From: Phyllobates terribilis
Taxonomy: Eukaryota
Assembly: GCF_046119375.1 (NCBI RefSeq)
Contig: NW_027362767.1
Coordinates: forward strand, 284,394,001-284,458,000
Length of the DNA: 64,000 bases
Direction of reading: 5' to 3'
The notes beneath the pieces are model-generated. The model saw nothing but the letters and a program-made list of their open reading frames with translations. It searched no databases and was not told the DNA's origin. The position numbers and the translations under genes are program-made. The number at the start of each line of letters is the position of its first letter. Position 1 is the first letter of the stretch. Positions 50,673-63,736 of the stretch are shown here, piece after piece.

Positions 50673-51765
50673 TGTGGTGCCCTGCTGCGCATCGGTGCCA
50701 CAGAACCCAGAAGGGTGCATGGATGGACTTCTCCACAAGAGGCCCTCACACATTCACACACCTCCACCCTACCACCTCAGACCAGCAGAGTGAGCCCATT
50801 AGGGAGATATATAGGGAGGGTGGAACCAGGCAGCTCAGTTTAGTGTTCAGAGACAGAGAGGAACACAGGTCAGAGTTGATCAGAGAGCGTGCTGATGCTC
50901 AGAGAGCAGTGAAGAGCAGCAAGCTGGCTGCAGTGCTTAGGCGAGCCAAGGCCTACAGCACGTGTGAAAGCCTAGTGAGGGCCTTGAGTGGGCCGAAGGC
51001 GAGAGGAGAAAGAAGAAGTAGCAAGGGGGCAGAGGAGCATACCAGGCTCACCCCGATATATATACCGGACACCGGGTCCGCGCCTACAGGGACTCCTTAT
51101 ACCCAGTAGGAACCACCAGAACCCCAGGAGGACTACAGGTCCCAGGTTTGCCAAATGTTGATTACAGTACCAGAGCTAGGAGTCACGGAGGTCCCAGCGT
51201 CCAGGGAGAGTGATCTCCAAAGAGTAGGCCCAACCACCAGGTCAGCAGGTGCAAAGAGAGATAGTAACCAAGCTAGGCCTAGCTCCAGGCAGGTCAGAAG
51301 CTTAGAGAGTAAAGCAACGAATCAGGAGGCCCTATACCCGCTCACTGGGGAGAGTCCAAAAGTGTGCCCTTCACCTGAAGTACCCTGGACCGTGCCTGCA
51401 GCATCACCAGTAAAGGTACTGAAGCTTACCCCTGTGTGAGTGTCTGTCTTTCCTCTGGGACCGTCCTGCCGTCTCTCCCCTGCACCACCATCCAGTATAC
51501 CCCATGCTGCCCTGAGGCCTGCTCCACCTGTGGGGAGCCATTCCATCACAAGCTGCCCTACCATCAGCCTCAGAGGACTGCTCCGCAGCGGCGGCACCCC
51601 TTAGCCGCATTCCACAGGTGGCGTCACGAACTTTCCAAATCCCCTATATAATCCCCCTTTTACTGACCGCCCTGGGTCACGGACCGAGCCAGCCACCGTG
51701 ATATTCCCTATACCGGCATCCAGAGGCCCGGCTGCCGAGTACCCCATGGCCCAGGGGGCGCGTCA
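50673..51765 (+). repeat. Element A 5' LTR
   Basis: TGTGG...GCGCGTCA; TATATA at 50808; AGTAAA at 51409; roughly 95% identical to the 3' LTR (estimated from the first ~165 bp). Confidence 0.95.
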
Positions 51766-51769
51766 GCTT

Positions 51770-51789
51770 TGGCGTCACGAACAGGATTC
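51770..51789 (+). promoter_or_regulatory. Primer-binding site, tRNA-Ser(CGA)
   Basis: TGGCGTCACGAACAGGATTC is complementary to the 3' end of the vertebrate tRNA-Ser(CGA) isodecoder (...GAATCCTGTTCGTGACG-CCA; tRNA sequence recalled, not looked up). Confidence 0.85.
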
Positions 51790-52157
51790 CGTGCCCGTTG
51801 CCACCGGGTACTGTGCGTCTTAAGAGACTGTGATACTCACTGAGGTGAAGTTTTCCCGCCATTCCCGAGATTTCCTGCCATTGTCCCCCATCTTCCTGTC
51901 GCCGTGCGGGAAGAAGAGGGGCGTAACCGTGGGAATCGGAGAGGCGTAACCGCTGGAAGCGCACGAAGTTGAGGACACGCCCCGCCCCTGACGTCGAACC
52001 AGGAAACGTCAGTTCCTGGAAGGAGCCAGAGGACGCTCTGATGTCAGACGCAAGCGACGCAAGGTCCTGGAAGAAGACCGTCGCCCGCGGAGCTGCGGCC
52101 TACCTGGTAAAGATAGTGAAGAAGGAAGGCTCCGGTTCACTAGAGGGGAGCAACAAT

Positions 52158-53254
52158 GGCCGACGACCAGCAAGCCGCCGGAGCATCGGTTAACGCAACT
52201 GATGCCGAACCTGTGCCCGGCGCTGCACAGGCCGGAGCGGCCACTCCACCAACAGGGGTCATGACCCCGTTATAACCTATGGCCCTGCCGTATATCCCTG
52301 TAGCGAAGTGGCTCCCCCAGTATAACGGCAAACCGAACACCCTGTCCGGATTCAAGAGAAGAAATGCGGTGTGCTAGACATGTATTCTATGACCGGTAAA
52401 CAGAGAGCCGCTGTTGTGCTGGGACAATTGACTGGTGCCGCAAAGCGGGAAGTTGAAACCTGGCCAGCTGCAGACCAGGAATCAGTATCCATCATCTTTA
52501 AGAGACTGCAGACTGTGTTTGAAAACCGCACCGAGACGGATCTCCCGAAGAGGTTCTACCACTGTTATGAACTGCTACAAACACTAAGGAAAGATAGGAA
52601 AACTGTCCCTACAATAGGACTAAGCTGATTCCCTATGATGCAGCGGGGGACCTGTTCCTTGTGAACAGACCCGCCTAAGTCCTCGGCTAGTCTGAACGCA
52701 GACCTATAGATATAAGGGAGGGGTCCCTACAAGAACTAGGGACTGGGATATAGTTGGACACCTCCTAGCAGAAATTGTAGCAGAGCAAAGACAAACAAAC
52801 AAACAGAAGTACTAGTGGTCAAAAGACCAAGCAAACTACAAAGTTAGGTACAAGGCACCTGGCTAGCTTAAGAGTAAAAGTAACACTGAAGTCCAGCAAG
52901 GCCAGGAGGGCGGAGCTGGATTATATAGGCAAAAAGTCAAGTGACCTGCAAAATAGAAAAAACTAACAGGAGGGTACTAACAACCACTGTGTCCAGAAAA
53001 CTGAGGACAGTATCCGGGACTACGCCTGGCATTTACAAGAGGCACTGCGGGCCCTGAAACAGGTTAGTCCAGCCAGCATACAAGATGAAAATAAAATGCT
53101 GACGGAACAGTTCATCCGGGGGTTAAGGTCCCAGGAGGAGAGCAGAACTGTACGGTGGTGGGCCTTAGATCATCCAGATGCCACCTTTGACACCCTTAAG
53201 GACATGGCTATAAAGGGTCTGCAGCCCCTGGAACCATCAGATACTGCTGTCTGA
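52158..53254 (+). pseudogene. Gypsy gag (capsid region), disrupted
   Basis: LPYIP..WLPQY.G...VVLGQLTGAAKREV...RFYHC|VQKTEDSIRDYA...EQFIRGL; split by a nested solo LTR; no CCHC knuckle seen. Confidence 0.8.
52563..52982 (-). mobile_element. Nested solo LTR (420 bp) inside gag
   Basis: TGTTA...TAACA termini; 5-bp TSD ACCAC (52558-52562, 52983-52987); removing it restores the gag frame FYHCVQKTEDSIRDY; minus-strand CCTATATAA. Confidence 0.9.
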
Positions 53255-53259
53255 GTCCT

Positions 53260-56200
53260 TAACCTCACCAGATGAAGTGGAGGATAATGACCCGGGAACC
53301 CAGGTGGAGGATTGGTGTCAACAGCTCCATGTTGGGACAGACACCACTCCTGCCCATCAGAAACAGGGTGTACACCGGTTGGTTCAGGAATACGAGCGGG
53401 TATTCAGTAAACACTGACTTGATTTCAGGAGGATTAAAGGGGTACAACACTATATACCCACAGGTGACCACCCACCCATCAAAGAATGTTACAGGCCAAT
53501 CCCACCAGCACACTACCAGAAAGCGAAGGAAATGTTGCATGACATGAGGAAGGCAGGGGTAATAAGAGATAGCTGTAGCCCCTGGGCAGCTTCCCTGGTG
53601 CTAGTCAGGAAAAAGGATGGAAGCATGAGAATGTGTGTAGATTACAGACAAGTAAATCGCATAACACACAAAGATGCATTCCCTTTGCCCTGTATAGAGG
53701 AATCCCTGGCTGCATTAAAGTCTGCAAATTACTTCTCCACCCTTGACCTCACTAGTGCGTACTGGCAAGTCGCTGTTGCTGAGGAGGATCGGGAGAAGAC
53801 GGCCTTTACTACCCCGATGGGACTCTGCGAGTTCAACAGTATGCCGTTCAGACTCTGCAACGCCCCCGGAACGTTCCAGAGATTAATGGCGTGCTGCCTG
53901 GGACATCGAAACTTCGAGACTGTACTGCTATACCTGGATGACATGATAGTGTACTCCAAAACGTACCATGACGATTTGAAGCACCTGGCAGAGGTATTTG
54001 AGTCTCTGTCCCGGTGTGGGATGAAGCTGAAGCCCTCCAAGTGCCACCTGCTCAAGCGAAATGTACAGTACCTGGGGCACATCGTCAGTCCAGAAGGAGT
54101 AGCACCGTACCCGGAGAAGGTCACTGCCATCCAGAAATGGCCGGAGCCGAAGAGCCTCAAGGAGGTACGTCAGTTCCTGGGACTAGTCAGGTATTACCAG
54201 AGGTTTGTGAAGGACTACACCAAGAAAGCGGCACCTTTGCAAGATCTCCTGGTAGGACAGTCCGGGAAAGGCAGAAACCCCCCGTTCCAGTGGGGTAAGG
54301 AGCAAGCTGAATCCTTTGAGGTGATGAAGGAGATCCTGACCGGCAAAGAGATCCTAGCCTACCCTGACTACAGCCAACTGTTCCTGCTGTACACTAATGC
54401 CAGCAACGAGGGATTAGGAGCTGTGTTAATTCAGAAGCAGAATGGCCGAGAGAAGGTGATCGCCTATGCAAGCAGGAAGCTCTGCCCGACCGAGAGGAAC
54501 CCGGAGAACTATAGCAGCTTCAAGTTGGAGTTCCTAGCCCTGGTCTGGGCCTTCACCGAGCGGTTCAAGCACTACCTAGCCTCCAGTAAGTTCACTGCCT
54601 ACACTGATAATAACCCCTTGACTTATCTGGAAACAGCCAAGTTAGGAGCCATGGAACAATGAAGGATGGCTCGGCGGTCAAACTACCAGTTCACCATTAA
54701 GTACCGGGCAGGCGGTAAGAATGCCAACGCCGATGCCCTGTCCAGGATGCCGCACAATTCGGATACTGAAGAAGTGGATGACCTGGAGGAGATTGAGCTA
54801 CCTGCCTTCCACCGTAATGGAATGGTCCACGAGCAACGAGCCTCCTGGAGGCATCGCGGTATGACGTTAAACCCTTTGCCTCACCACAGCTGGAAGGAGA
54901 CCCAGGACAGCGACCCGGTTGTCAGCCATATCAAAGAATTGATAACCCAGGAAGGTTCCTCCCTGGAGAAGGACGCGTCTCCACAAGCCAAGTAACTGTG
55001 GAATGAGAGAAGCCGGCTGTTCATCTATAGGGAGAAGCTGTGCTGAAGGTACGTCAACCCGAGGACCCATGAGATGGTATGGCAGATCGTAGTGCCTAGG
55101 ACGGACATCCAGATGGTGTTGGAGGCCTACCACGATCAAGCAGGGCACTTTGGCTGGAAAAAGCTAGAAACCCTCCTGAAGAGTCGGTTTTACTGGGTTG
55201 GAATGCGGAGTTCCAAAGAGAGATGGTGCCGGGATTGTGGACCCTGTAGCCTCAGAAGAAAGGACTACGGCTGCCAGGAGGCACCCCTGCAGTCCATCAA
55301 GACAACCCAGCCCCTGGAGATCGTCGCTCTAGACCACGTCAAGCTGTCACCCAGCAGGTCAGGCTACTCGTATGCCCTGACCATGGTGGATCACAACTCC
55401 CGGTTCCTGGTGGTAGCCCCCGTCAAGGATCTGACGGCAGAAACTGCAGCAAGGACGTTTCAAGCCTACTTCTGCAGGCCCCATGGATACCGGGATGAGG
55501 TGCTGACGGACGAAGGCCCTGCCTTTGAAGCCGAATTATTCAAGGAGTTCTGCCATCTGTACGGGTGTAAGAAAATCCGGACTACACCGTACCACCCCCA
55601 AACCAATGGGTTATGTGAAAAGATGAATAACATCGTCATCGACCTGTTGAAGACCTTACCACTAGAAGAAAGAAACCAGTGGCCAGACAAGCTATCTGAT
55701 CTGGTAGATCTGTACAACCACATACCTGTGAGTTCCACCAATTGTACTCCAGCATATCTCATGTGAGCAAGACCCAGAAAGTTGCCCATGGACCTGGAGC
55801 TTGGTGTAGTAGAACCCGAAGCAGATATGTCCACTGAAGGCTGGGACATGACGCGACAGGAACAGTACAGGAGAGTACAAGCCTGTGTCGAAGACAGTTT
55901 GAATAGGGTAAGAGACAAGCAGGAAGCACAGTACAACAAGAGTGCACCAGCAGAACCCTTTTCACCTGGAGAAGTTGTGCTAAAGAGAAAAAGAAGAAAC
56001 CACAAACTTGATGACCAGTGTGAGAGGGAACCCTACACTGTGTTAAATTCAAGATTTGATAACAGGAAGGCCTGTTTAATTACCAAGGACGGAGGAAGAA
56101 CGACTGCAACAGTATCTAGAAACCATCTGAAGTTGTGTCCAGGTCTGCTAAAGCCCCAGGAAGAAGTGCCTCTCATCGTACCGGAGGAGCCTAAAAAAGC

Positions 56201-56573
56201 AGTAATACATACTGAATTAGGAGATTTCCCGGCAGATTGGCCCCAACTAGGAGGAGCAGTGATAATACCTGTGATCCACTTCTACCAACAGCCAGAAGAC
56301 CCTCCACAGCAAGTAGAACCTCTAGGTGCCCCAGAAGAGCCTGCTCAGGAACAATCCCCGGAAGAAGGATCACCAGTAGAAGCAGAGCAAGAAAGCCCAG
56401 CCAATGGTACACTTGCCAGTCCCGTATGGAGGTTAAGACAGTCTTGCAGTCCCTCCACACCTAGAACTGACAGAATGGGAGGTAGTACAAACACCAGTAC
56501 CACACGCATCCCAGTACTACGTAGGTCAACACGTAGCACGCAAGGTCAGACCCCTGTCAGATACAGAGAGTAG
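53260..56573 (+). pseudogene. Gypsy pol: RT, RNase H, integrase
   Basis: CVDYR, LDLTSAYWQ, YLDD; TNAS (catalytic D>N), NYSSFKLE, TDNNPL; HHCC zinc finger, LDHV / TDEG / GLCEKMN; all four ORF pieces share one frame and are broken only by stops; no protease motif found. Confidence 0.95.
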
Positions 56574-57150
56574 AAAGAGAAACTCTGATAGTATAAATAG
56601 TTGCCCCTTGGGGTATGTTATTCTTGTGTAATTTTCATGTATGTATTGACTTATTTTTGCCTTACAATGGACAATTTAGGTGACATGGACACTTTTCTTG
56701 TTGCATTTAGTTACCCGTAAGGGTATATATAAAGGATTCGGTGGCTGAGGACTGTGTGCAGCCCAAAAACTGTTTACTTGTACATAATTGCACTCCCTGG
56801 AGTGCCCCTTTTAGGTAACCACTGAACAAAAACCTGTTTAGCGTGGCGGAAGACGTGGTCCAACTCCGGATCACCTATGCCCTGCAGCCACGCCAAGGGC
56901 CTACGTGGAGGGTTTACGGACAGGTCCCTCAAGCTCCCTTGTACTTTGCAGTGAAATGGACACCCTGTTAGGGGACTCCCTGACAATTGCTCAAAAACTC
57001 TAACTATTGTACATATATTTATTATTTATTACGTTTTTGTTACCTGTAATGTTCAAGCAAAGTGCCTCCCATAAAGGGAAGAAAAGTTGTTATTGTTAAC
57101 GAACCTGTTTTTGAGAAAAATGCTTCAGTTCAGGAGTACTGAGTTTTACT

Positions 57151-57158
57151 AGGGGGAA
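57151..57158 (+). promoter_or_regulatory. Polypurine tract of element A
   Basis: AGGGGGAA directly before the 3' LTR TG. Confidence 0.85.
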
Positions 57159-58251
57159 TGTGGCGCCCTGCTGCGCATCGATGCCACAGAACCCAGAAGG
57201 GTGCATGGATGGACTTCTCCACAAGAGGCCTTCACACATTCACACACCTCCACCCTACCACCTCAGACCAGCAGAGGGAGCTTGTTAGGGAGATATATAG
57301 GGAGGGTGGAGCCAGGCAGCTCAGTTTAGTGTTCAGAGACAGAGAGGAACACAGCTCAGAGTTGAGCAGAGAGTGTGCTGACGCTCAGAGAGCAGTGAAG
57401 AGCAGCAAGCTGGCTGCAGTGCTTAGGCGAGCCAAGGCCTACAGCACGTGTGAAAGCCTAGTGAGGGCCTTGAGTGGGCCGAAGGCGAGAGGAGAAAGAA
57501 GAAGTAGCAAGGGGGCAGAGGAGCATACCAGGCTCACCCCGATATATATACCGGACACCGGGTCCGCGCCTACAGGGACTCCTTATACCCAGTAGGAACC
57601 ACCGGAACCCCTGGAGGACTACAGGTCCCATGTTTGCCAAACGCTGATTACAGTACCAGGGCTAGGAGTCACGGAAGTCCCAGCGTCCAGGGAGAGTGAT
57701 CTCCAAAGAGAAGGCCCTACCACAAGGTCAGCAGGTGCAAAGAGAGACAGTAACCAAGCTAGGCCTAGCTCCAGGCAGGTCAGAAGCTTAGAGAGTAAAG
57801 CAACGAATCAGGAGGCCCTATACCCGCTCACTGGGGAGAGTCCAAAAGTGTGCCCTTCACCTGGAGTACCCTGGACCGTGCCTGCAGCATCACCAGTAAA
57901 GGTACTGAAGCTTACCCCCGTGTGAGTGTCCGTCTTTCCTCCGGGACCGTCCTGCCGTCTCTCCCCTGCACCACCATCCAGTATACCCTACGCTGCCCTG
58001 AGGCCCGCTCCACCTGTGGGGAGCCATTCCATCACAAGCTGCCCTACCATCTGCCTCAGAGGACTGCTCCGCAGCGGCGGCACCCCTTAGCCGCATTCCA
58101 CAGGTGGTGTCACAAACTTTCCAAATCCCCTATATAATCCCCCTTTTACTGACCGCCCTGGGTCATGGACCGGGCCAGCCACCGTGATATCCCCTATACC
58201 GGCAACGAGAGGCCCGGCTGCCGAGTACCCCACAGCCCAGGGGGCGCGTCA
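57159..58251 (+). repeat. Element A 3' LTR
   Basis: Direct repeat of 50673-51765, same length. Confidence 0.95.
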
Positions 58252-59017: not shown

Positions 59018-60080
59018 TGTGGCACCCCAGGGGTCTGGTTTCCACAGTAACAGCAATGTTATGTCTGAGAGCAGGTGGGAGGTCTCTTGGTCAGGAATCC
59101 TATGCATGCCACACCTCCTGCCCAGTCCTGGGAGGGGAAGAACTTCCCCTATATAAACCTGGGGCTGAGGCAGGGTTAGAGAGTTCAGAGGGAGAGTGCA
59201 GCCAGGAGGGCTGACAGGGAGCTGTGGCTCCGGCTGGGCCCAGCTCCTGGGCCATGCCAGAAGTAGAGAAGAGAAGCAGCATAGGAAGAAACAACAGGAG
59301 CTCTGTGGGAGCAGTGCTACAAGGAGTCAGGGGCTGGCAGTGCAGAGCTCGCCCTGACTGAGAAGATTTCTTACCGGACCCGGAGTCCGAGGCTGTGGGG
59401 ACTAACTCCTACCCAGCAGCAGAATCCGTCAGGCAGGGGATTTCAGGTCCTCTGGCCAAGAAACCCGAAGGCACGGTCACACGCATGGGACCAGCACCGC
59501 CGTCATGGAGCGGAAGCTACTAGAAGGCCCCGAGTCACCGGCCATACAGGTGAGCACCACACGGTACACTCAGGGACGTGGGCTACTTATACCCGCCTCT
59601 AGCAAGGTAGCCAGAAGAGTACAGTCAGTTTGGGAGGCCTACAACTCCGCCTGGCCAGGGGAGATCCCATCTGCTCAAGGACTGACCAGGCCCCGATCGC
59701 TAGCCAGTACTCCGGGAGGGTCTATCTTTGTCACCAGTAAAGACCCTGAATCACACCGCATCGTCTCTGAGTGATTCCTGCTACCCCCATCATCCACGTC
59801 GGCTGCCCTGAGGCCATACCCCTCCCGTTGGGGGTTATACCATCTACGCTGCACTATCCTACCACCGGCCTCAGCGGTCTGCCCTGCAGCGGCAGCTCCA
59901 TAGCTGCATTCAACAGGTGGCGTAGTCGTTCCAACATCTACCGCTGATACAGCGCCACTTAGTCTGACTCCCTGGGCACGGACCGGATCACCGCCATGAG
60001 ATTACAACCCTCAACAGATCCGGCTCCGGGTAAGCTCCCGCGTGCGCAACGCTGCGCGACACAGGCCCAGGGGCGCGTCA
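59018..60080 (+). repeat. Element B 5' LTR
   Basis: TGTGGCACCCC...GGGCGCGTCA; TATATAAA at 59150; AGTAAA at 59736. Confidence 0.95.
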
Positions 60081-60085
60081 ACTTT

Positions 60086-60104
60086 TGGCGTAGTCGGCAG
60101 GATT
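60086..60104 (+). promoter_or_regulatory. Primer-binding site, tRNA-Ser(AGA/TGA)
   Basis: TGGCGTAGTCGGCAGGATT is complementary to ...AATCCTGCCGACTACG-CCA (tRNA sequence recalled, not looked up). Confidence 0.88.
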
Positions 60105-60470
60105 TCGTGCCCGCAACCACCGGGTACTGCGTGCCTGAAAAAGACTGTTCAAACTTACCAGTGGTGAAGATTCCCGCCATCCGGCGCCATCTTCTGCCTT
60201 CTTCCCGCCATCCGTGGAGTTTTCCCGCCGTTGGACGCCATCTTGAAGACGCCGCGCGGGAAGAAGAGGGGCGTGGACTCCGAAAGCGCGCGAGAACTGA
60301 AGCCCCGCCTCACGTCCGGACGTTGCGTAAGGTCCTGGAAGGAGCCCAGCAGACGCCGACGTCACAGGAACGCGACGGAAGGTCCTCAACCCTGACGATC
60401 CACTGCGGAGCCGCGGCCTACGGAAGAGGATCATCGCAAGGTAGGCCACGGTCCACTAGGGGGGAGAAGG

Positions 60471-60872
60471 ATGTCGGATACGGAGGAGAGCTTCACCGCT
60501 TCAACCCCCGCCAGCGCCACCGCTGTTGCGGTCATGCCTTTCACCATGCCCTATATCCCGGGGGCAGCCTGGCTACCCCAGTACTCAGGGGAGTCACATA
60601 CCCTGCATGACTTTAGAGAAAAGCTGGATAGCCTCTTCCAGGTGTACCCCCTCACAGAGGAGCAAAAAGTGAGCATCCTGGTGGCCCAATTAACCGGGGC
60701 AGCCCAAAGGGAGGTAAAGTCCTGGCCACCTGGGAGGAGGACTGTCGCAGAGATACTAACCCAGCTAACCGAGGAAGAGCTGCAGTACTACCAATACGAG
60801 GAAAGCCAAGAGGACCCGGATGGGTCTGAGGACTACCCTCAGGAGGGAGCACAAAGAGGACATAGCTACTGA
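60471..60872 (+). CDS. Truncated Gag-derived ORF with acidic tail (133 aa)
   Basis: MPYIPGAAWLPQYSG...ILVAQLTGAAQREVKSWP aligns to element A gag (LPYIPVAKWLPQYNG...VVLGQLTGAAKREVETWP); open frame ending EEELQYYQYEESQEDPDGSEDY. Confidence 0.65.
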   Translation: MSDTEESFTASTPASATAVAVMPFTMPYIPGAAWLPQYSGESHTLHDFREKLDSLFQVYPLTEEQKVSILVAQLTGAAQREVKSWPPGRRTVAEILTQLTEEELQYYQYEESQEDPDGSEDYPQEGAQRGHSY

Positions 60873-61000
60873 AGGGAAGTAGCGTGAATAAAGAGCTGTA
60901 AATAGTTACCCGTAAGGGTACAAGGACTGCTGCTAATTAAAATATGGTCCCCGTTGGGATTAGTGAATTGTTCCCCATGTGCCCCTATCTTAAACCAGCT

Positions 61001-61100
61001 TGAGGACTGTGAGCAGCCATTCCTTATCCCCACAGGCTGAGGACAGTGAGCAGCCGTTCCTTATCCCCACTGGCCGAGGACTGAGAGCGGCCATATCCTG
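61001..61100 (+). repeat. 37-bp tandem repeat, three copies, in the element B 3'UTR
   Basis: (T/C)GAGGAC(T/A)G(T/A)GAGC(A/G)GCC units start at 61001, 61038 and 61075. Confidence 0.85.
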
Positions 61101-61407
61101 TAAATAATTATGTGTTTCTAGTAATTTATGGGAGTCTTTGGTGGATTTACCGGGAATCCTTTGTACATGGTTGGAGCGTAACCCAGGAATGGACTAAAGA
61201 CTGTTAAGGACTCGGGGCAGGACAGACCCCTACCTGGTTACGTCTCCCTGTTTTGGTGAAATGGACACCTTACTTTTCTTCAAAGACTGCACCCGGTTGC
61301 GGACACGCCGTAACCATCTTTATGTGTTTTTCTTATTGTATTATTATTGTTTATACCTTGTTATGTTTTTCTAAAAATATGTTTAGTCCCGGAGTACTAA
61401 ATTTCAC

Positions 61408-61417
61408 TAGGGGGGAA
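61408..61417 (+). promoter_or_regulatory. Polypurine tract of element B
   Basis: TAGGGGGGAA directly before the 3' LTR. Confidence 0.85.
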
Positions 61418-62481
61418 TGTGGCACCCCAGGGGTCTGGTTTCCACAGTAACAGCAATGTTATGTCTGAGAGCAGGTGGGAGGTCTCTTGGTCAGGAATCC
61501 TATGCATGCCACACCTCCTGCCCAGTCCTGGGAGGGGAAGAACTTCCCCTATATAAACCTGGGGCTGAGGCAGGGTTAGAGAGTTCAGAGGGAGAGTGCA
61601 GCCAGGAGGGCTGACAGGGAGCTGTGGCTCCGGCTGGGCCCAGCTCCTGGGCCATGCCAGAAGTAGAGAAGAGAAGCAGCATAGGAAGAAACAACAGGAG
61701 CTCTGTGGGAGCAGTGCTACAAGGAGTCAGGGGCTGGCAACTGCAGAGCTCGCCCTGACTGAGAAGATTTCTTACCGGACCCGGAGTCCGAGGCTGTGGG
61801 GACTAACTCCTACCCAGCAGCAGAATCCGTCAGGCAGGGGATTTCAGGTCCTCTGGCCAAGAAACCCGAAGGCACGGTCACACGCATGGGACCAGCACCG
61901 CCGTCATGGAGCGGAAGCTACTAGAAGGCCCCGAGTCACCGGCCATACGGGTGAGCACCACACGGTACACTCAGGGACGTGGGCTACTTATACCCGCCTC
62001 TAGCAAGGTAGCCAGAAGAGTACAGTCAGTTTGGGAGGCCTACAACTCCGCCTGGCCAGGGGAGATCCCATCTGCTCAAGGACTGACCAGGCCCCGATCG
62101 CTAGCCAGTACTCCAGGAGGGTCTATCTTTGTCACCAGTAAAGACCCTGAATCACACCGCATCGTCTCTGAGTGATTCCTGCTACCCCCATCATCCACGT
62201 CGGCTGCCCTGAGGCCATACCCCTCCCGTTGGGGGTTATACCATCTACGCTGCACTATCCTACCACCGGCCTCAGCGGTCTGCCCTGCAGCGGCAGCTCC
62301 ATAGCTGCATTCAACGGGTGGCGTAGTCGTTCCAACATCTACCGCTGATACAGCGCCACTTAGTCTGACTCCCTGGGCACGGACCGGATCACCGCCACGA
62401 GACTACAACCCTCAACAGATCCGGCTCCGGGTAAGCTCCCGCGTGCGCAACGCTGCGCGACACAGGCCCAGGGGCGCGTCA
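61418..62481 (+). repeat. Element B 3' LTR
   Basis: About 99.3% identical to 59018-60080 by manual comparison. Confidence 0.95.
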
Positions 62482-63303: not shown

Positions 63304-63736
63304 ATTAGCGATGGGAAAACAGATTGCAGGACTCTGGTTCAATGGCCGGGTCAGTGATCTGTAACTCCTGGACTGGAGACCTGTGATCTTCATACTCCTG
63401 GACGGGAGGCCTGTGAATCTCCATACTCCTGGACGGAAGGCCTGTGAATATCCATACTCCTGGACGGAAGGCCTGTGAATCTCCATACTCCTGGACGGGA
63501 GGCTTGTGACTCTCCTTACCTCCCTGTATTCCCGGCTCCTCTTTTGATTAGCTGGGCTGGTGTGATGTCATCATTGGAGCATGATACACTCATGACATCG
63601 CATCAGCCCAGCTAATCCAAAGATGAGTCGGTAATAGCGGAAGTTAAGGAGAGCCACAGGCCCCCAGTCAAGGGGGTACAGATTGCTGACCTGGCCAATA
63701 GACCGGAGTCCTGTGAATTGATTCTCCCAACTCTAG
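63304..63736. mobile_element. hAT-type MITE with an internal 31-bp tandem array
   Basis: Imperfect inverted arms (CAGGACTCTGGTTCAATGGCCGGGTCAG / CTGACCTGGCCAATAGACCGGAGTCCTG); ~5 copies of ATACTCCTGGACGG(A/G)AGGCCTGTGAATCTCC at 63361-63520. Confidence 0.7.

What the first reader, a model, noticed from the sequence alone, without database searches (positions are those of the whole stretch)
51619..51631. Second primer-binding-site copy inside the LTR that tracks the primer tRNA (element A)
Seen: 134 nt before the LTR end, TGGCGTCACGAAC is identical to the first 13 nt of this element's own PBS (tRNA-Ser CGA); the 3' LTR copy at ~58105 has two CpG-type changes. At the equivalent position in element B, after the same GCATTC.ACAGG context, the motif is TGGCGTAGTCG, matching B's different PBS. 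The two LTR families are otherwise highly diverged, so the matched change argues for selection on tRNA complementarity. Both motifs lie downstream of the AGTAAA signal, in presumptive U5. Inference: this may be an undescribed dual-PBS mechanism (second tRNA docking site, alternative short strong-stop priming, dimer/packaging aid, or a decoy for 3' tRNA fragments, which are known to silence LTR elements through the PBS).
Basis: partly seen in the sequence, partly recalled or inferred. Interest (0 to 1): 0.85.

Follow-up and report, generated by a model that had tools for sequence, protein, structure and literature searches.

The report
Second tRNA-Ser primer site inside LTR
Two related frog-type Gypsy retrotransposons each carry, inside the repeat at their ends, a short extra copy of the site where their own serine tRNA primer binds. 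The extra copy differs between the two elements exactly as the main site does, which points to a second, so far undescribed, start site for copying the element.

Summary
In element A, the first 13 nt of the 18-nt PBS (51770) recur at 51619-51631, 134 nt before the LTR end. In element B, the first 11 nt of a different PBS (60086) recur at the aligned U5 position (59918 and 62319). Shuffles never reach these lengths. Each motif matches its own PBS and shares only TGGCGT with the other's.

Papers identify the primers as tRNA-Ser(CGA) for A and tRNA-Ser(AGA/TGA) for B. The flanks of motif and PBS are not homologous, so this is not a recent segmental duplication. The upstream site has the anatomy of an LTR-end/PBS junction: CA, two bases, then TGG.

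Seven relatives (RT 56-68% identical, six of them with tRNA-Ser-type PBSs) have no such copy. The feature is therefore confined to the A/B lineage, and the "tracking" rests on one co-switch.

My best reading (confidence 0.4) is a nested short second PBS, usable as an alternative start for minus-strand DNA and rewritten from the tRNA when used. Rivals are a non-priming tRNA docking site, or a relic. The other copies of these families could not be reached, so the function is untested.

The parts
50673..51765 (+). Element A, 5' LTR (TG...CA, 1093 nt)
   Evidence: 96.3% identical and gap-free against 57159-58251. Starts TGTGG and ends GCGTCA.
51409..51414 (+). AGTAAA, the presumed poly(A) signal of A. 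It is conserved in B (59736-59741) and in relative C.
   Evidence: Invariant block CAGTAAAG in the A/B/C alignments. Its function is inferred.
51506..51618 (+). U5a: conserved block directly upstream of the motif, holding a long predicted hairpin
   Evidence: It lies within the only LTR stretch that BLAST aligns between A and B (A 51506-51624, 75% identity). Local alignment z = 24, against 5.6 for U5b. Predicted helix with two double changes in its inner stem.
51619..51631 (+). The finding: 13-nt copy of the start of A's PBS inside U5, preceded by CCACA GG
   Evidence: Exact match to 51770-51782. No shuffle of 2000 reaches 13 nt.
51632..51765 (+). U5b: 134 nt between the motif and the LTR end, weakly conserved between A and B
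51770..51787 (+). Main 18-nt PBS of A, complementary to the 3' end of tRNA-Ser(CGA). A 4-nt spacer GCTT separates it from the LTR.
   Evidence: The complement of its first 17 nt equals the published tRF-Ser-CGA-013 primer (PMC9659620).
52276..53242 (+). A gag remnant (broken: two frame changes; only about half of a relative's Gag is matched)
   Evidence: tblastn with the Gag of relative C; counts and outer bounds only.
53310..56570 (+). A pol (RT, RNase H, integrase). Broken: five in-frame stops. The protease part is not detected.
   Evidence: tblastn with Pol of relative C (P0131), one frame, five stops. Pfam RVT_1, RT_RNaseH, Integrase_H2C2 and rve on the open pieces.
57151..57158 (+). Polypurine tract of A (AGGGGGAA), directly before the 3' LTR
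57159..58251 (+). Element A, 3' LTR. The motif copy at 58105-58117 carries two CpG transitions.
59018..60080 (+). Element B, 5' LTR (1063 nt)
   Evidence: 99.3% identical to 61418-62481. TSD TATG on both sides.
59918..59928 (+). B: 11-nt copy of the start of B's PBS inside U5, preceded by CAACA GG, 152 nt before the LTR end
60086..60103 (+). Main 18-nt PBS of B, complementary to the 3' end of tRNA-Ser(AGA/TGA). A 5-nt spacer separates it from the LTR.
   Evidence: Its complement equals the 3' end of tRNA-Ser-AGA-1-1 / TGA-2-1 as printed in PMC10359600.
60471..60872 (+). B: open N-terminal gag fragment. The rest of the internal region is deleted (the internal part is only 1337 nt).
   Evidence: 47% identical to residues 3-130 of the Gag of relative C. 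ORF list.
61409..61417 (+). Polypurine tract of B
61418..62481 (+). Element B, 3' LTR, with an intact motif copy at 62319-62329

Best explanation
The motif is a short (11-13 nt) second primer-binding site for the same tRNA-Ser that the main 18-nt PBS uses. It is nested in U5, 151 nt (A) or 168 nt (B) upstream of the main site.

Proposed working (inferred): the genomic RNA carries both sites downstream of R.
- When the tRNA primes at the main site, the progeny get the long LTR seen in A and B.
- When it primes at the upstream site, strong-stop DNA is shorter. The progeny would then have LTRs ending at the upstream CA (...CCACA in A, ...CAACA in B), with GG, the motif, U5b and the main PBS as the start of the internal region.
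- Both forms would give the same RNA, so the two forms could interconvert.

A site that is used for priming is rewritten from the tRNA copy at the end of plus-strand strong-stop DNA. When the lineage changed its serine tRNA, both sites would therefore be replaced as blocks.

Shown: the sequence match, its anatomy, the co-change, and the absence in relatives. Inferred: that priming happens or happened at the upstream site, and everything about its use or benefit.
For: - Each motif matches its own PBS from the TGG end, which pairs with the tRNA's CCA 3' end. This is the part a primer needs.
- The length of 11-13 nt covers CCA, the discriminator base and the acceptor strand. A working PBS can be that short: 11 nt in Drosophila Gypsy (PMC1635307).
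- The site is preceded by CA plus 2 nt, like a normal LTR-end/PBS junction. Relatives G and I have CA TT TGG, H has a 3-nt spacer, and E and F have 5-nt spacers. In A, CCACA is a perfect inverted copy of the LTR start TGTGG.
- Between A and B the site differs as a block with a length change. Before the shared TTCCAA, A has the 13-nt match plus T, and B has 11 nt. The conserved flank ends exactly at TGGCGT. This pattern is expected from templated replacement.
- PBSs are known to be rewritten by whichever tRNA primes, and virus variants with multiple PBSs arose spontaneously in culture (PMC1084362).
- It is not a segmental duplication, because the flanks are unrelated.
Against: - Both copies in the window are of the long-LTR form. 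No short-LTR copy has been seen, and none could be looked for.
- None of 7 relatives has the site, so it is dispensable for this group and the co-change was observed only once.
- The match stops sharply at 13 or 11 nt, whereas an 18-nt tRNA copy might be expected. This needs the extra assumption that the unmatched tail is not fixed.
- Direct repeats 150 nt apart are prone to deletion during reverse transcription.
- The consensus fold puts the first three bases of the motif in a predicted helix (weak, two sequences only).
Confidence: 0.4

Rival explanations
1. A tRNA docking site that does not prime. The motif holds a second tRNA-Ser molecule, or captures the tRNA before it is placed on the main PBS. 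Selection keeps it complementary to whichever tRNA the element uses.
For: The co-change with the PBS. The motif sits at the end of the best-conserved block of the LTR. Auxiliary U5-tRNA contacts that must match the primer are known in HIV-1 (PMC1084362), and second tRNA sites are known in Gypsy and Ty3 (PMC1635307).
Against: Known auxiliary contacts pair with other parts of the tRNA, so one molecule can make both contacts. Here both sites need the same 3' end, so one tRNA cannot make both. A multi-base change plus an indel is hard to reach by point mutation under selection. The site is absent from 7 relatives.
Confidence: 0.2
2. A relic without present function: an old LTR-end/PBS junction, or the product of an aberrant reverse-transcription event, that became part of U5. 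The own-PBS match in A and B would then reflect how and when it was written, not maintenance.
For: The junction-like anatomy (CA GG TGG). The lineage restriction. The poor conservation of U5b.
Against: U5b and the main PBS with its leader are homologous in A and B, and the leader is weakly homologous in C. The architecture therefore predates the A/B split, yet both sites differ in the same way afterwards. That needs either two parallel events at the same spot, or the upstream site being written from a tRNA after the split, which amounts to the main explanation. U5b shows no similarity to the leaders of relatives.
Confidence: 0.25
3. A decoy or sponge for 3' tRNA fragments that would otherwise block the main PBS.
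For: 3'-tRFs repress LTR elements through the PBS, and repression can be seed-independent (PMC12853362). The motif is complementary to the 3' end of the tRF.
Against: Only 11-13 of the 18-22 nt are matched. One extra site per RNA is a poor sponge for abundant small RNAs. A matched site on the same RNA would add a target rather than remove one.
Confidence: 0.05
4. The motif is unrelated to tRNA: a strand of an RNA helix or a protein-binding DNA motif that resembles the PBS by chance or convergence.
For: The consensus fold pairs CAGGUGG with a downstream CCACC/CCGCC segment.
Against: The own-PBS match of the variable bases in two families has a naive probability of about 4^-12, and shuffles never reach it. 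No complement of the motif is present in the element. Predicted folding energies of the region are no better than shuffles. No Rfam family matches.
Confidence: 0.03

Closest known systems
Two-site tRNA binding of Drosophila Gypsy and yeast Ty3 (5' PBS plus a 3'-terminal site), and the multipartite PBS of Ty1
   Same: A Ty3/Gypsy-type element with a short (11 nt in Gypsy) acceptor-end PBS and a second sequence complementary to the same primer tRNA (PMC1635307).
   Different: There, the second site pairs with a different part of the tRNA (anticodon or T-arm stems) and lies near the 3' end of the RNA, so one tRNA bridges the two ends. Here, the second site pairs with the same 3'-terminal bases and lies about 150 nt upstream in U5, so two tRNA molecules or alternative use are required.
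HIV-1 U5 contacts with the primer tRNA (A-rich loop with the anticodon; the PAS contact is recalled from my own knowledge), and laboratory variants with multiple PBSs
   Same: A U5 sequence upstream of the PBS has to match the primer tRNA for an altered primer to be kept stably. Variants with several PBSs arose during culture (PMC1084362).
   Different: The natural U5 contacts pair with the anticodon or T arm, not the 3' end. The multi-PBS genomes were transient laboratory products, not a fixed feature of two families.
Self-priming of fission-yeast Tf1 (from my own knowledge; not tested against a Tf1 sequence)
   Same: A second sequence in the 5' untranslated region is related to the PBS and decides where minus-strand synthesis begins.
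   Different: In Tf1 the upstream sequence is complementary to the PBS and acts as the primer itself. Here it is identical to the PBS, and no complement exists in the element.
PBS targeting by 3' tRNA fragments
   Same: Complementarity to the tRNA 3' end in the 5' untranslated region of an LTR element (PMC12853362).
   Different: Described targets are the PBS itself or its remnants downstream of the LTR, usually with a longer match. A second site inside U5 that follows the primer has not been described in the papers I could find.

Membership tests
Ty3/Gypsy (Metaviridae) LTR retrotransposon | Long terminal direct repeats starting TG and ending CA, flanked by a short target-site duplication | tested here: met
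   A: 1093-nt LTRs, with flanks AATA and CATA (3 of 4 bases). B: 1063-nt LTRs, with an exact TSD of TATG.
Ty3/Gypsy (Metaviridae) LTR retrotransposon | pol domain order RT, RNase H, integrase (integrase after RT) | tested here: met
   Pfam RVT_1 and RT_RNaseH on one open piece, Integrase_H2C2 and rve on a later one. One-frame alignment to the Pol of relative C. The protease was not detected in A.
Ty3/Gypsy (Metaviridae) LTR retrotransposon | PBS complementary to a tRNA 3' end just after the 5' LTR, and a polypurine tract just before the 3' LTR | tested here: met
   The complements of the PBSs equal published tRNA-Ser 3' ends. Polypurine tracts are seen.
Bipartite or multipartite PBS (Ty3, Drosophila Gypsy, Ty1) | The second site is complementary to a different part of the same tRNA, so that one tRNA molecule binds both sites | tested here: not met
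   The motif is identical to PBS positions 1-13 (A) or 1-11 (B). It therefore needs the same tRNA bases.
Bipartite or multipartite PBS (Ty3, Drosophila Gypsy, Ty1) | The second site lies near the 3' end of the genomic RNA (Ty3, Gypsy) | tested here: inconclusive
   The motif lies 205 nt (A) or 177 nt (B) downstream of AGTAAA. It should therefore be absent from the RNA 3' end, but the real poly(A) site was not mapped.
Retroviral U5 auxiliary tRNA contact (HIV-1 A-loop/PAS type) | A U5 sequence upstream of the PBS that matches the primer tRNA | tested here: met
Retroviral U5 auxiliary tRNA contact (HIV-1 A-loop/PAS type) | It pairs with the anticodon loop or T arm while the 3' end is on the PBS | tested here: not met
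   It pairs with the 3' end itself. Complementarity of the surrounding U5 to other tRNA parts was not tested (see Tried and rejected).
Tf1-type self-priming | An upstream sequence complementary to the PBS | tested here: not met
   The relation is identity, not complementarity. The only reverse-strand match with up to 2 mismatches lies far away, at 1445.
Working primer-binding site (minimal definition) | At least about 8-11 nt complementary to the tRNA 3' end including CCA, placed a few bases after a CA that could end an LTR | tested here: met
   13 nt and 11 nt, each preceded by CA GG.
Working primer-binding site (minimal definition) | Minus-strand DNA actually starts there (copies whose LTRs end at that CA, or tRNA-cDNA junctions) | not testable with these tools
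   The window holds no other copy. The source genome is not in the searchable collections.

The most novel reading that the evidence does not exclude
A natural two-PBS retrotransposon lineage. One genomic RNA offers the same tRNA two start sites, so the element switches between two LTR lengths. Both sites are rewritten from the tRNA, which lets the whole initiation region follow a change of primer. Alternatively, the upstream site is a selected second docking place for the primer tRNA's 3' end, a kind of tRNA-genome contact not described so far.
Probability: 0.3. Interest if true: 0.75.

Novelty: new variant of a known kind. Interest (0 to 1): 0.55.

Why it matters
Primer choice and placement are the first committed step in copying LTR elements and retroviruses. 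All known auxiliary tRNA contacts use parts of the tRNA other than its 3' end.

A fixed second site for the same 3' end, which changed together with the PBS when the lineage changed its serine tRNA, would show three things:
- that initiation sites can be duplicated and kept in nature;
- that LTR boundaries need not be unique for one RNA;
- that tRNA-templated rewriting can move a whole initiation region to a new primer.

It would also matter for annotation: LTR-boundary and PBS callers assume one PBS just outside the LTR. And it bears on ideas about host defences aimed at the PBS.

If it is only a relic, it is a neat but minor footprint of an unusual reverse-transcription event.

Tried and rejected
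Searches that gave nothing usable:
- A protein search with B's gag fragment found nothing.
- A search with the open frame that runs through U5a and the motif found nothing.
- The longest open piece of A's pol is not on record in the gene-position index, so other copies from the source genome could not be fetched.
- Pattern scans: the conserved leader pattern gave no hit in viral contigs and two bacterial chance hits in metagenomes. A 14-base U5 pattern gave only chance phage hits (those fetched loci, numbered below L121, are noise). A protein-based scan of viral contigs found nothing.
- Large frog genomes (Phyllobates, GCA_905171775.1) returned no DNA.
- L123 has no LTR pair and was not used. 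L124 stops 72 nt upstream of its PBS.

Ideas rejected:
- A recent segmental duplication of PBS plus flank: the flanks are unrelated.
- 'U5b is a former leader' (LTR extension): U5b shows no similarity to the leaders of C or E.
- A tRNA gene, SINE or known RNA family in the LTR: ARAGORN and Rfam found none.
- Special thermodynamic stability of the region: z-scores were -0.1 and -1.3.

Not done: I did not test U5 for complementarity to other parts of tRNA-Ser. That would have required typing an 85-nt sequence into a script.

Slips I declare:
- I did not repeat them in this report.

Full report
WHAT IS THERE. The last 14 kb of the window hold two LTR retrotransposons of one Ty3/Gypsy group.

Element A (50673-58251) has 1093-nt LTRs that are 96.3% identical without gaps. 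Its polypurine tract lies at 57151-58. It is a decayed copy. A relative's Pol aligns in one frame with five in-frame stops and no detectable protease part. The Gag remnant shows two frame changes. Pfam finds RT, RNase H and integrase on the open pieces.

Element B (59018-62481) has LTRs that are 99.3% identical, an exact TATG target-site duplication, and only 1337 nt between the LTRs. It keeps the first ~130 codons of gag and the polypurine tract. The window holds no other copy of either LTR.

THE OBSERVATION. A's LTR ends in CA at 51765. After GCTT comes an 18-nt PBS (51770-51787). Its first 13 nt recur at 51619-51631, 134 nt before the LTR end. The 3' LTR copy (58105) differs by two CpG transitions. 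That is ordinary decay: 13 of the 40 differences between the LTRs are of this type.

B's PBS starts at 60086, after a 5-nt spacer. Its first 11 nt recur at 59918 and 62319. In the A/B alignment the two motifs occupy the same columns, after GCATTC(C/A)ACAGG.

In both elements the PBS prefix is the longest word shared between the LTR and the 300 nt that follow it. LTR shuffles essentially never reach these lengths: 0 of 2000 for A and for B's 5' LTR, 1 of 2000 for B's 3' LTR. Each motif shares only TGGCGT with the other element's PBS.

THE PRIMERS. A full-text search for the complements of the two PBSs returned two useful papers. One lists A's as tRF-Ser-CGA-013 (PMC9659620). The other prints tRNA-Ser-AGA-1-1 and TGA-2-1, which end in B's (PMC10359600). 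These are human sequences, so their presence in the host is an inference. Counted on the tRNA, B's 11 nt are CCA, the discriminator base and the seven acceptor-stem bases. A's 13 nt add two T-stem bases.

WHAT IT IS NOT. The 60-100 nt on either side of the motif and of the PBS are unrelated (z below 1.3), so it is not a recent duplication of a PBS-bearing segment. There is no tRNA gene and no Rfam family. No complement of the motif exists in the element, so it is not a Tf1-like self-primer. The region does not fold better than shuffles.

ANATOMY OF THE UPSTREAM SITE. It reads CCACA GG TGG... in A and CAACA GG TGG... in B. That is a CA, two bases and a TGG-anchored tRNA match, which is the layout of an LTR-end/PBS junction. 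In A, CCACA is a perfect inverted copy of the LTR start TGTGG. Both spacings occur at true junctions in this group. Relatives G and I have CA TT TGG, H has 3 nt, and E and F have 5 nt, like the 4-5 nt at the main junctions of A and B.

Between A and B, the block upstream of the motif (U5a) and the leader after the PBS are well conserved (z = 24 each). The 134-152 nt between the motif and the LTR end (U5b) are much less so (z = 5.6). BLAST similarity stops exactly at TGGCGT and resumes after the variable part of the PBS.

The two motifs differ as a block with a length change. A has the 13-nt match plus T, and B has 11 nt, before a shared TTCCAA.

RELATIVES. Close relatives were hard to reach. 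The source genome is not in the searchable collections and several frog genomes return no DNA. I obtained seven elements with a readable LTR and PBS:
- C: Logan contig L125, RT 68% identical to A. Its LTR starts TGTGGTACCCC like A and B. Its PBS equals A's plus one base.
- D: a marine scaffold.
- E: Brienomyrus.
- F.
- G.
- H and I: both from the frog Pristimantis.

Six of the seven have tRNA-Ser-type PBSs. E, H and I carry B's 18-mer exactly; C, F and G carry variants differing by one or two bases. None has an anchored PBS prefix of 7 nt or more anywhere in its LTR.

E has TGGCGT 139 nt before its LTR end. Six bases are expected by chance about once in four such LTRs.

The leaders of A and B are weakly similar to C's leader (z = 3-4), and U5b is not. 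The main PBS is therefore the ancestral one. The upstream motif was either gained in the A/B lineage or lost in C. The 'tracking' thus rests on one co-switch between two families.

HOW IT MOST LIKELY WORKS. A PBS is rewritten in each cycle from the tRNA that primed, because plus-strand strong-stop DNA ends with a copy of the tRNA's 3' part. This is established retrovirology. PBS reversion and spontaneous multi-PBS variants in HIV-1 illustrate it (PMC1084362).

Priming is the only simple way I see to replace a 5-7-base block, with an indel, by the matching bases of a new tRNA at a second site. I therefore read the motif as a short second PBS that has been used for priming at least since the A/B split.

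Since both sites lie downstream of R in the same RNA, priming at the upstream one would give progeny with shorter LTRs ending at the upstream CA. Priming at the main one restores the long form. This is inference. Both copies here are long, and I could not look for short ones.

The sharp end of the match at 11-13 nt fits a short PBS of the Drosophila Gypsy kind (11 nt; PMC1635307). It does require that the unmatched tail of the tRNA copy is not fixed.

The rivals are: a docking site that never primes (0.2); a relic (0.25); a 3'-tRF decoy (0.05; only 11-13 nt matched, although seed rules are not strict, PMC12853362); and a tRNA-unrelated motif (0.03).

COMPARISON WITH WHAT IS KNOWN. Second tRNA contacts are known in Ty3, Drosophila Gypsy, Ty1 and HIV-1. 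In all of them the second contact uses another part of the tRNA, so that one molecule makes both. Here both sites need the same 3' end, so the feature fails that defining test. It works, at most, like an alternative PBS.

In four targeted searches, plus two that came back as noise, I found no paper describing a natural LTR element with a second same-end PBS inside U5. The library lacks most subscription journals, so this absence is weak evidence.

VERDICT. This is a real, non-random, lineage-restricted feature. It is a new variant among tRNA-genome contacts. The mechanism is plausible but untested, and the comparative support is thin (one co-switch; absent in seven relatives).

Noticed in passing
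window 63386-63540: Tandem repeat of a 31-nt unit, about 4-5 copies, downstream of element B.
   Followed up: no
window 59018-62481: Element B is a 3.46-kb internally deleted derivative with near-identical LTRs and an exact TATG duplication. It is a young, non-autonomous copy that still keeps the motif, PBS, leader, gag start and polypurine tract.
   Followed up: partly
window 51506-51600 and 59802-59905: A long predicted hairpin (GCTGCCCTGAGGCC ... GGCCTCAG.GG.CTGC) lies in the conserved U5a block. Its inner helix keeps pairing through two double changes between A and B. Its function is unknown.
   Followed up: partly
window 51790-51810 and 60107-60127: A conserved small hairpin, GTGCCCG ... 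CGGGTAC, lies 3-4 nt 3' of the 18-nt PBS in both elements.
   Followed up: no
window 51643-51652: A TATATAA word lies in A's U5b, just downstream of the motif. It is absent at the aligned place in B.
   Followed up: no
L125:1007-1025 and L131:814-832: The PBSs of relatives C and G equal those of A and B with one extra base each. This could be a bulged PBS or a host tRNA variant.
   Followed up: no
L128:9330-9340: The fish element E has GCTT followed by TGGCGT 139 nt before its LTR end. That is the distance of the motif in A and B, but only 6 nt match its PBS, which is about chance level.
   Followed up: partly
L126:100-9338: A marine metagenome scaffold carries two head-to-tail elements sharing one LTR. 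The repeat of 3792 nt is 100% identical.
   Followed up: no
L133:7826-7979: The Pristimantis relative I has LTRs of only 154 nt, with a CA TT junction to a tRNA-Ser PBS. This shows how widely U5 length varies in this group.
   Followed up: no
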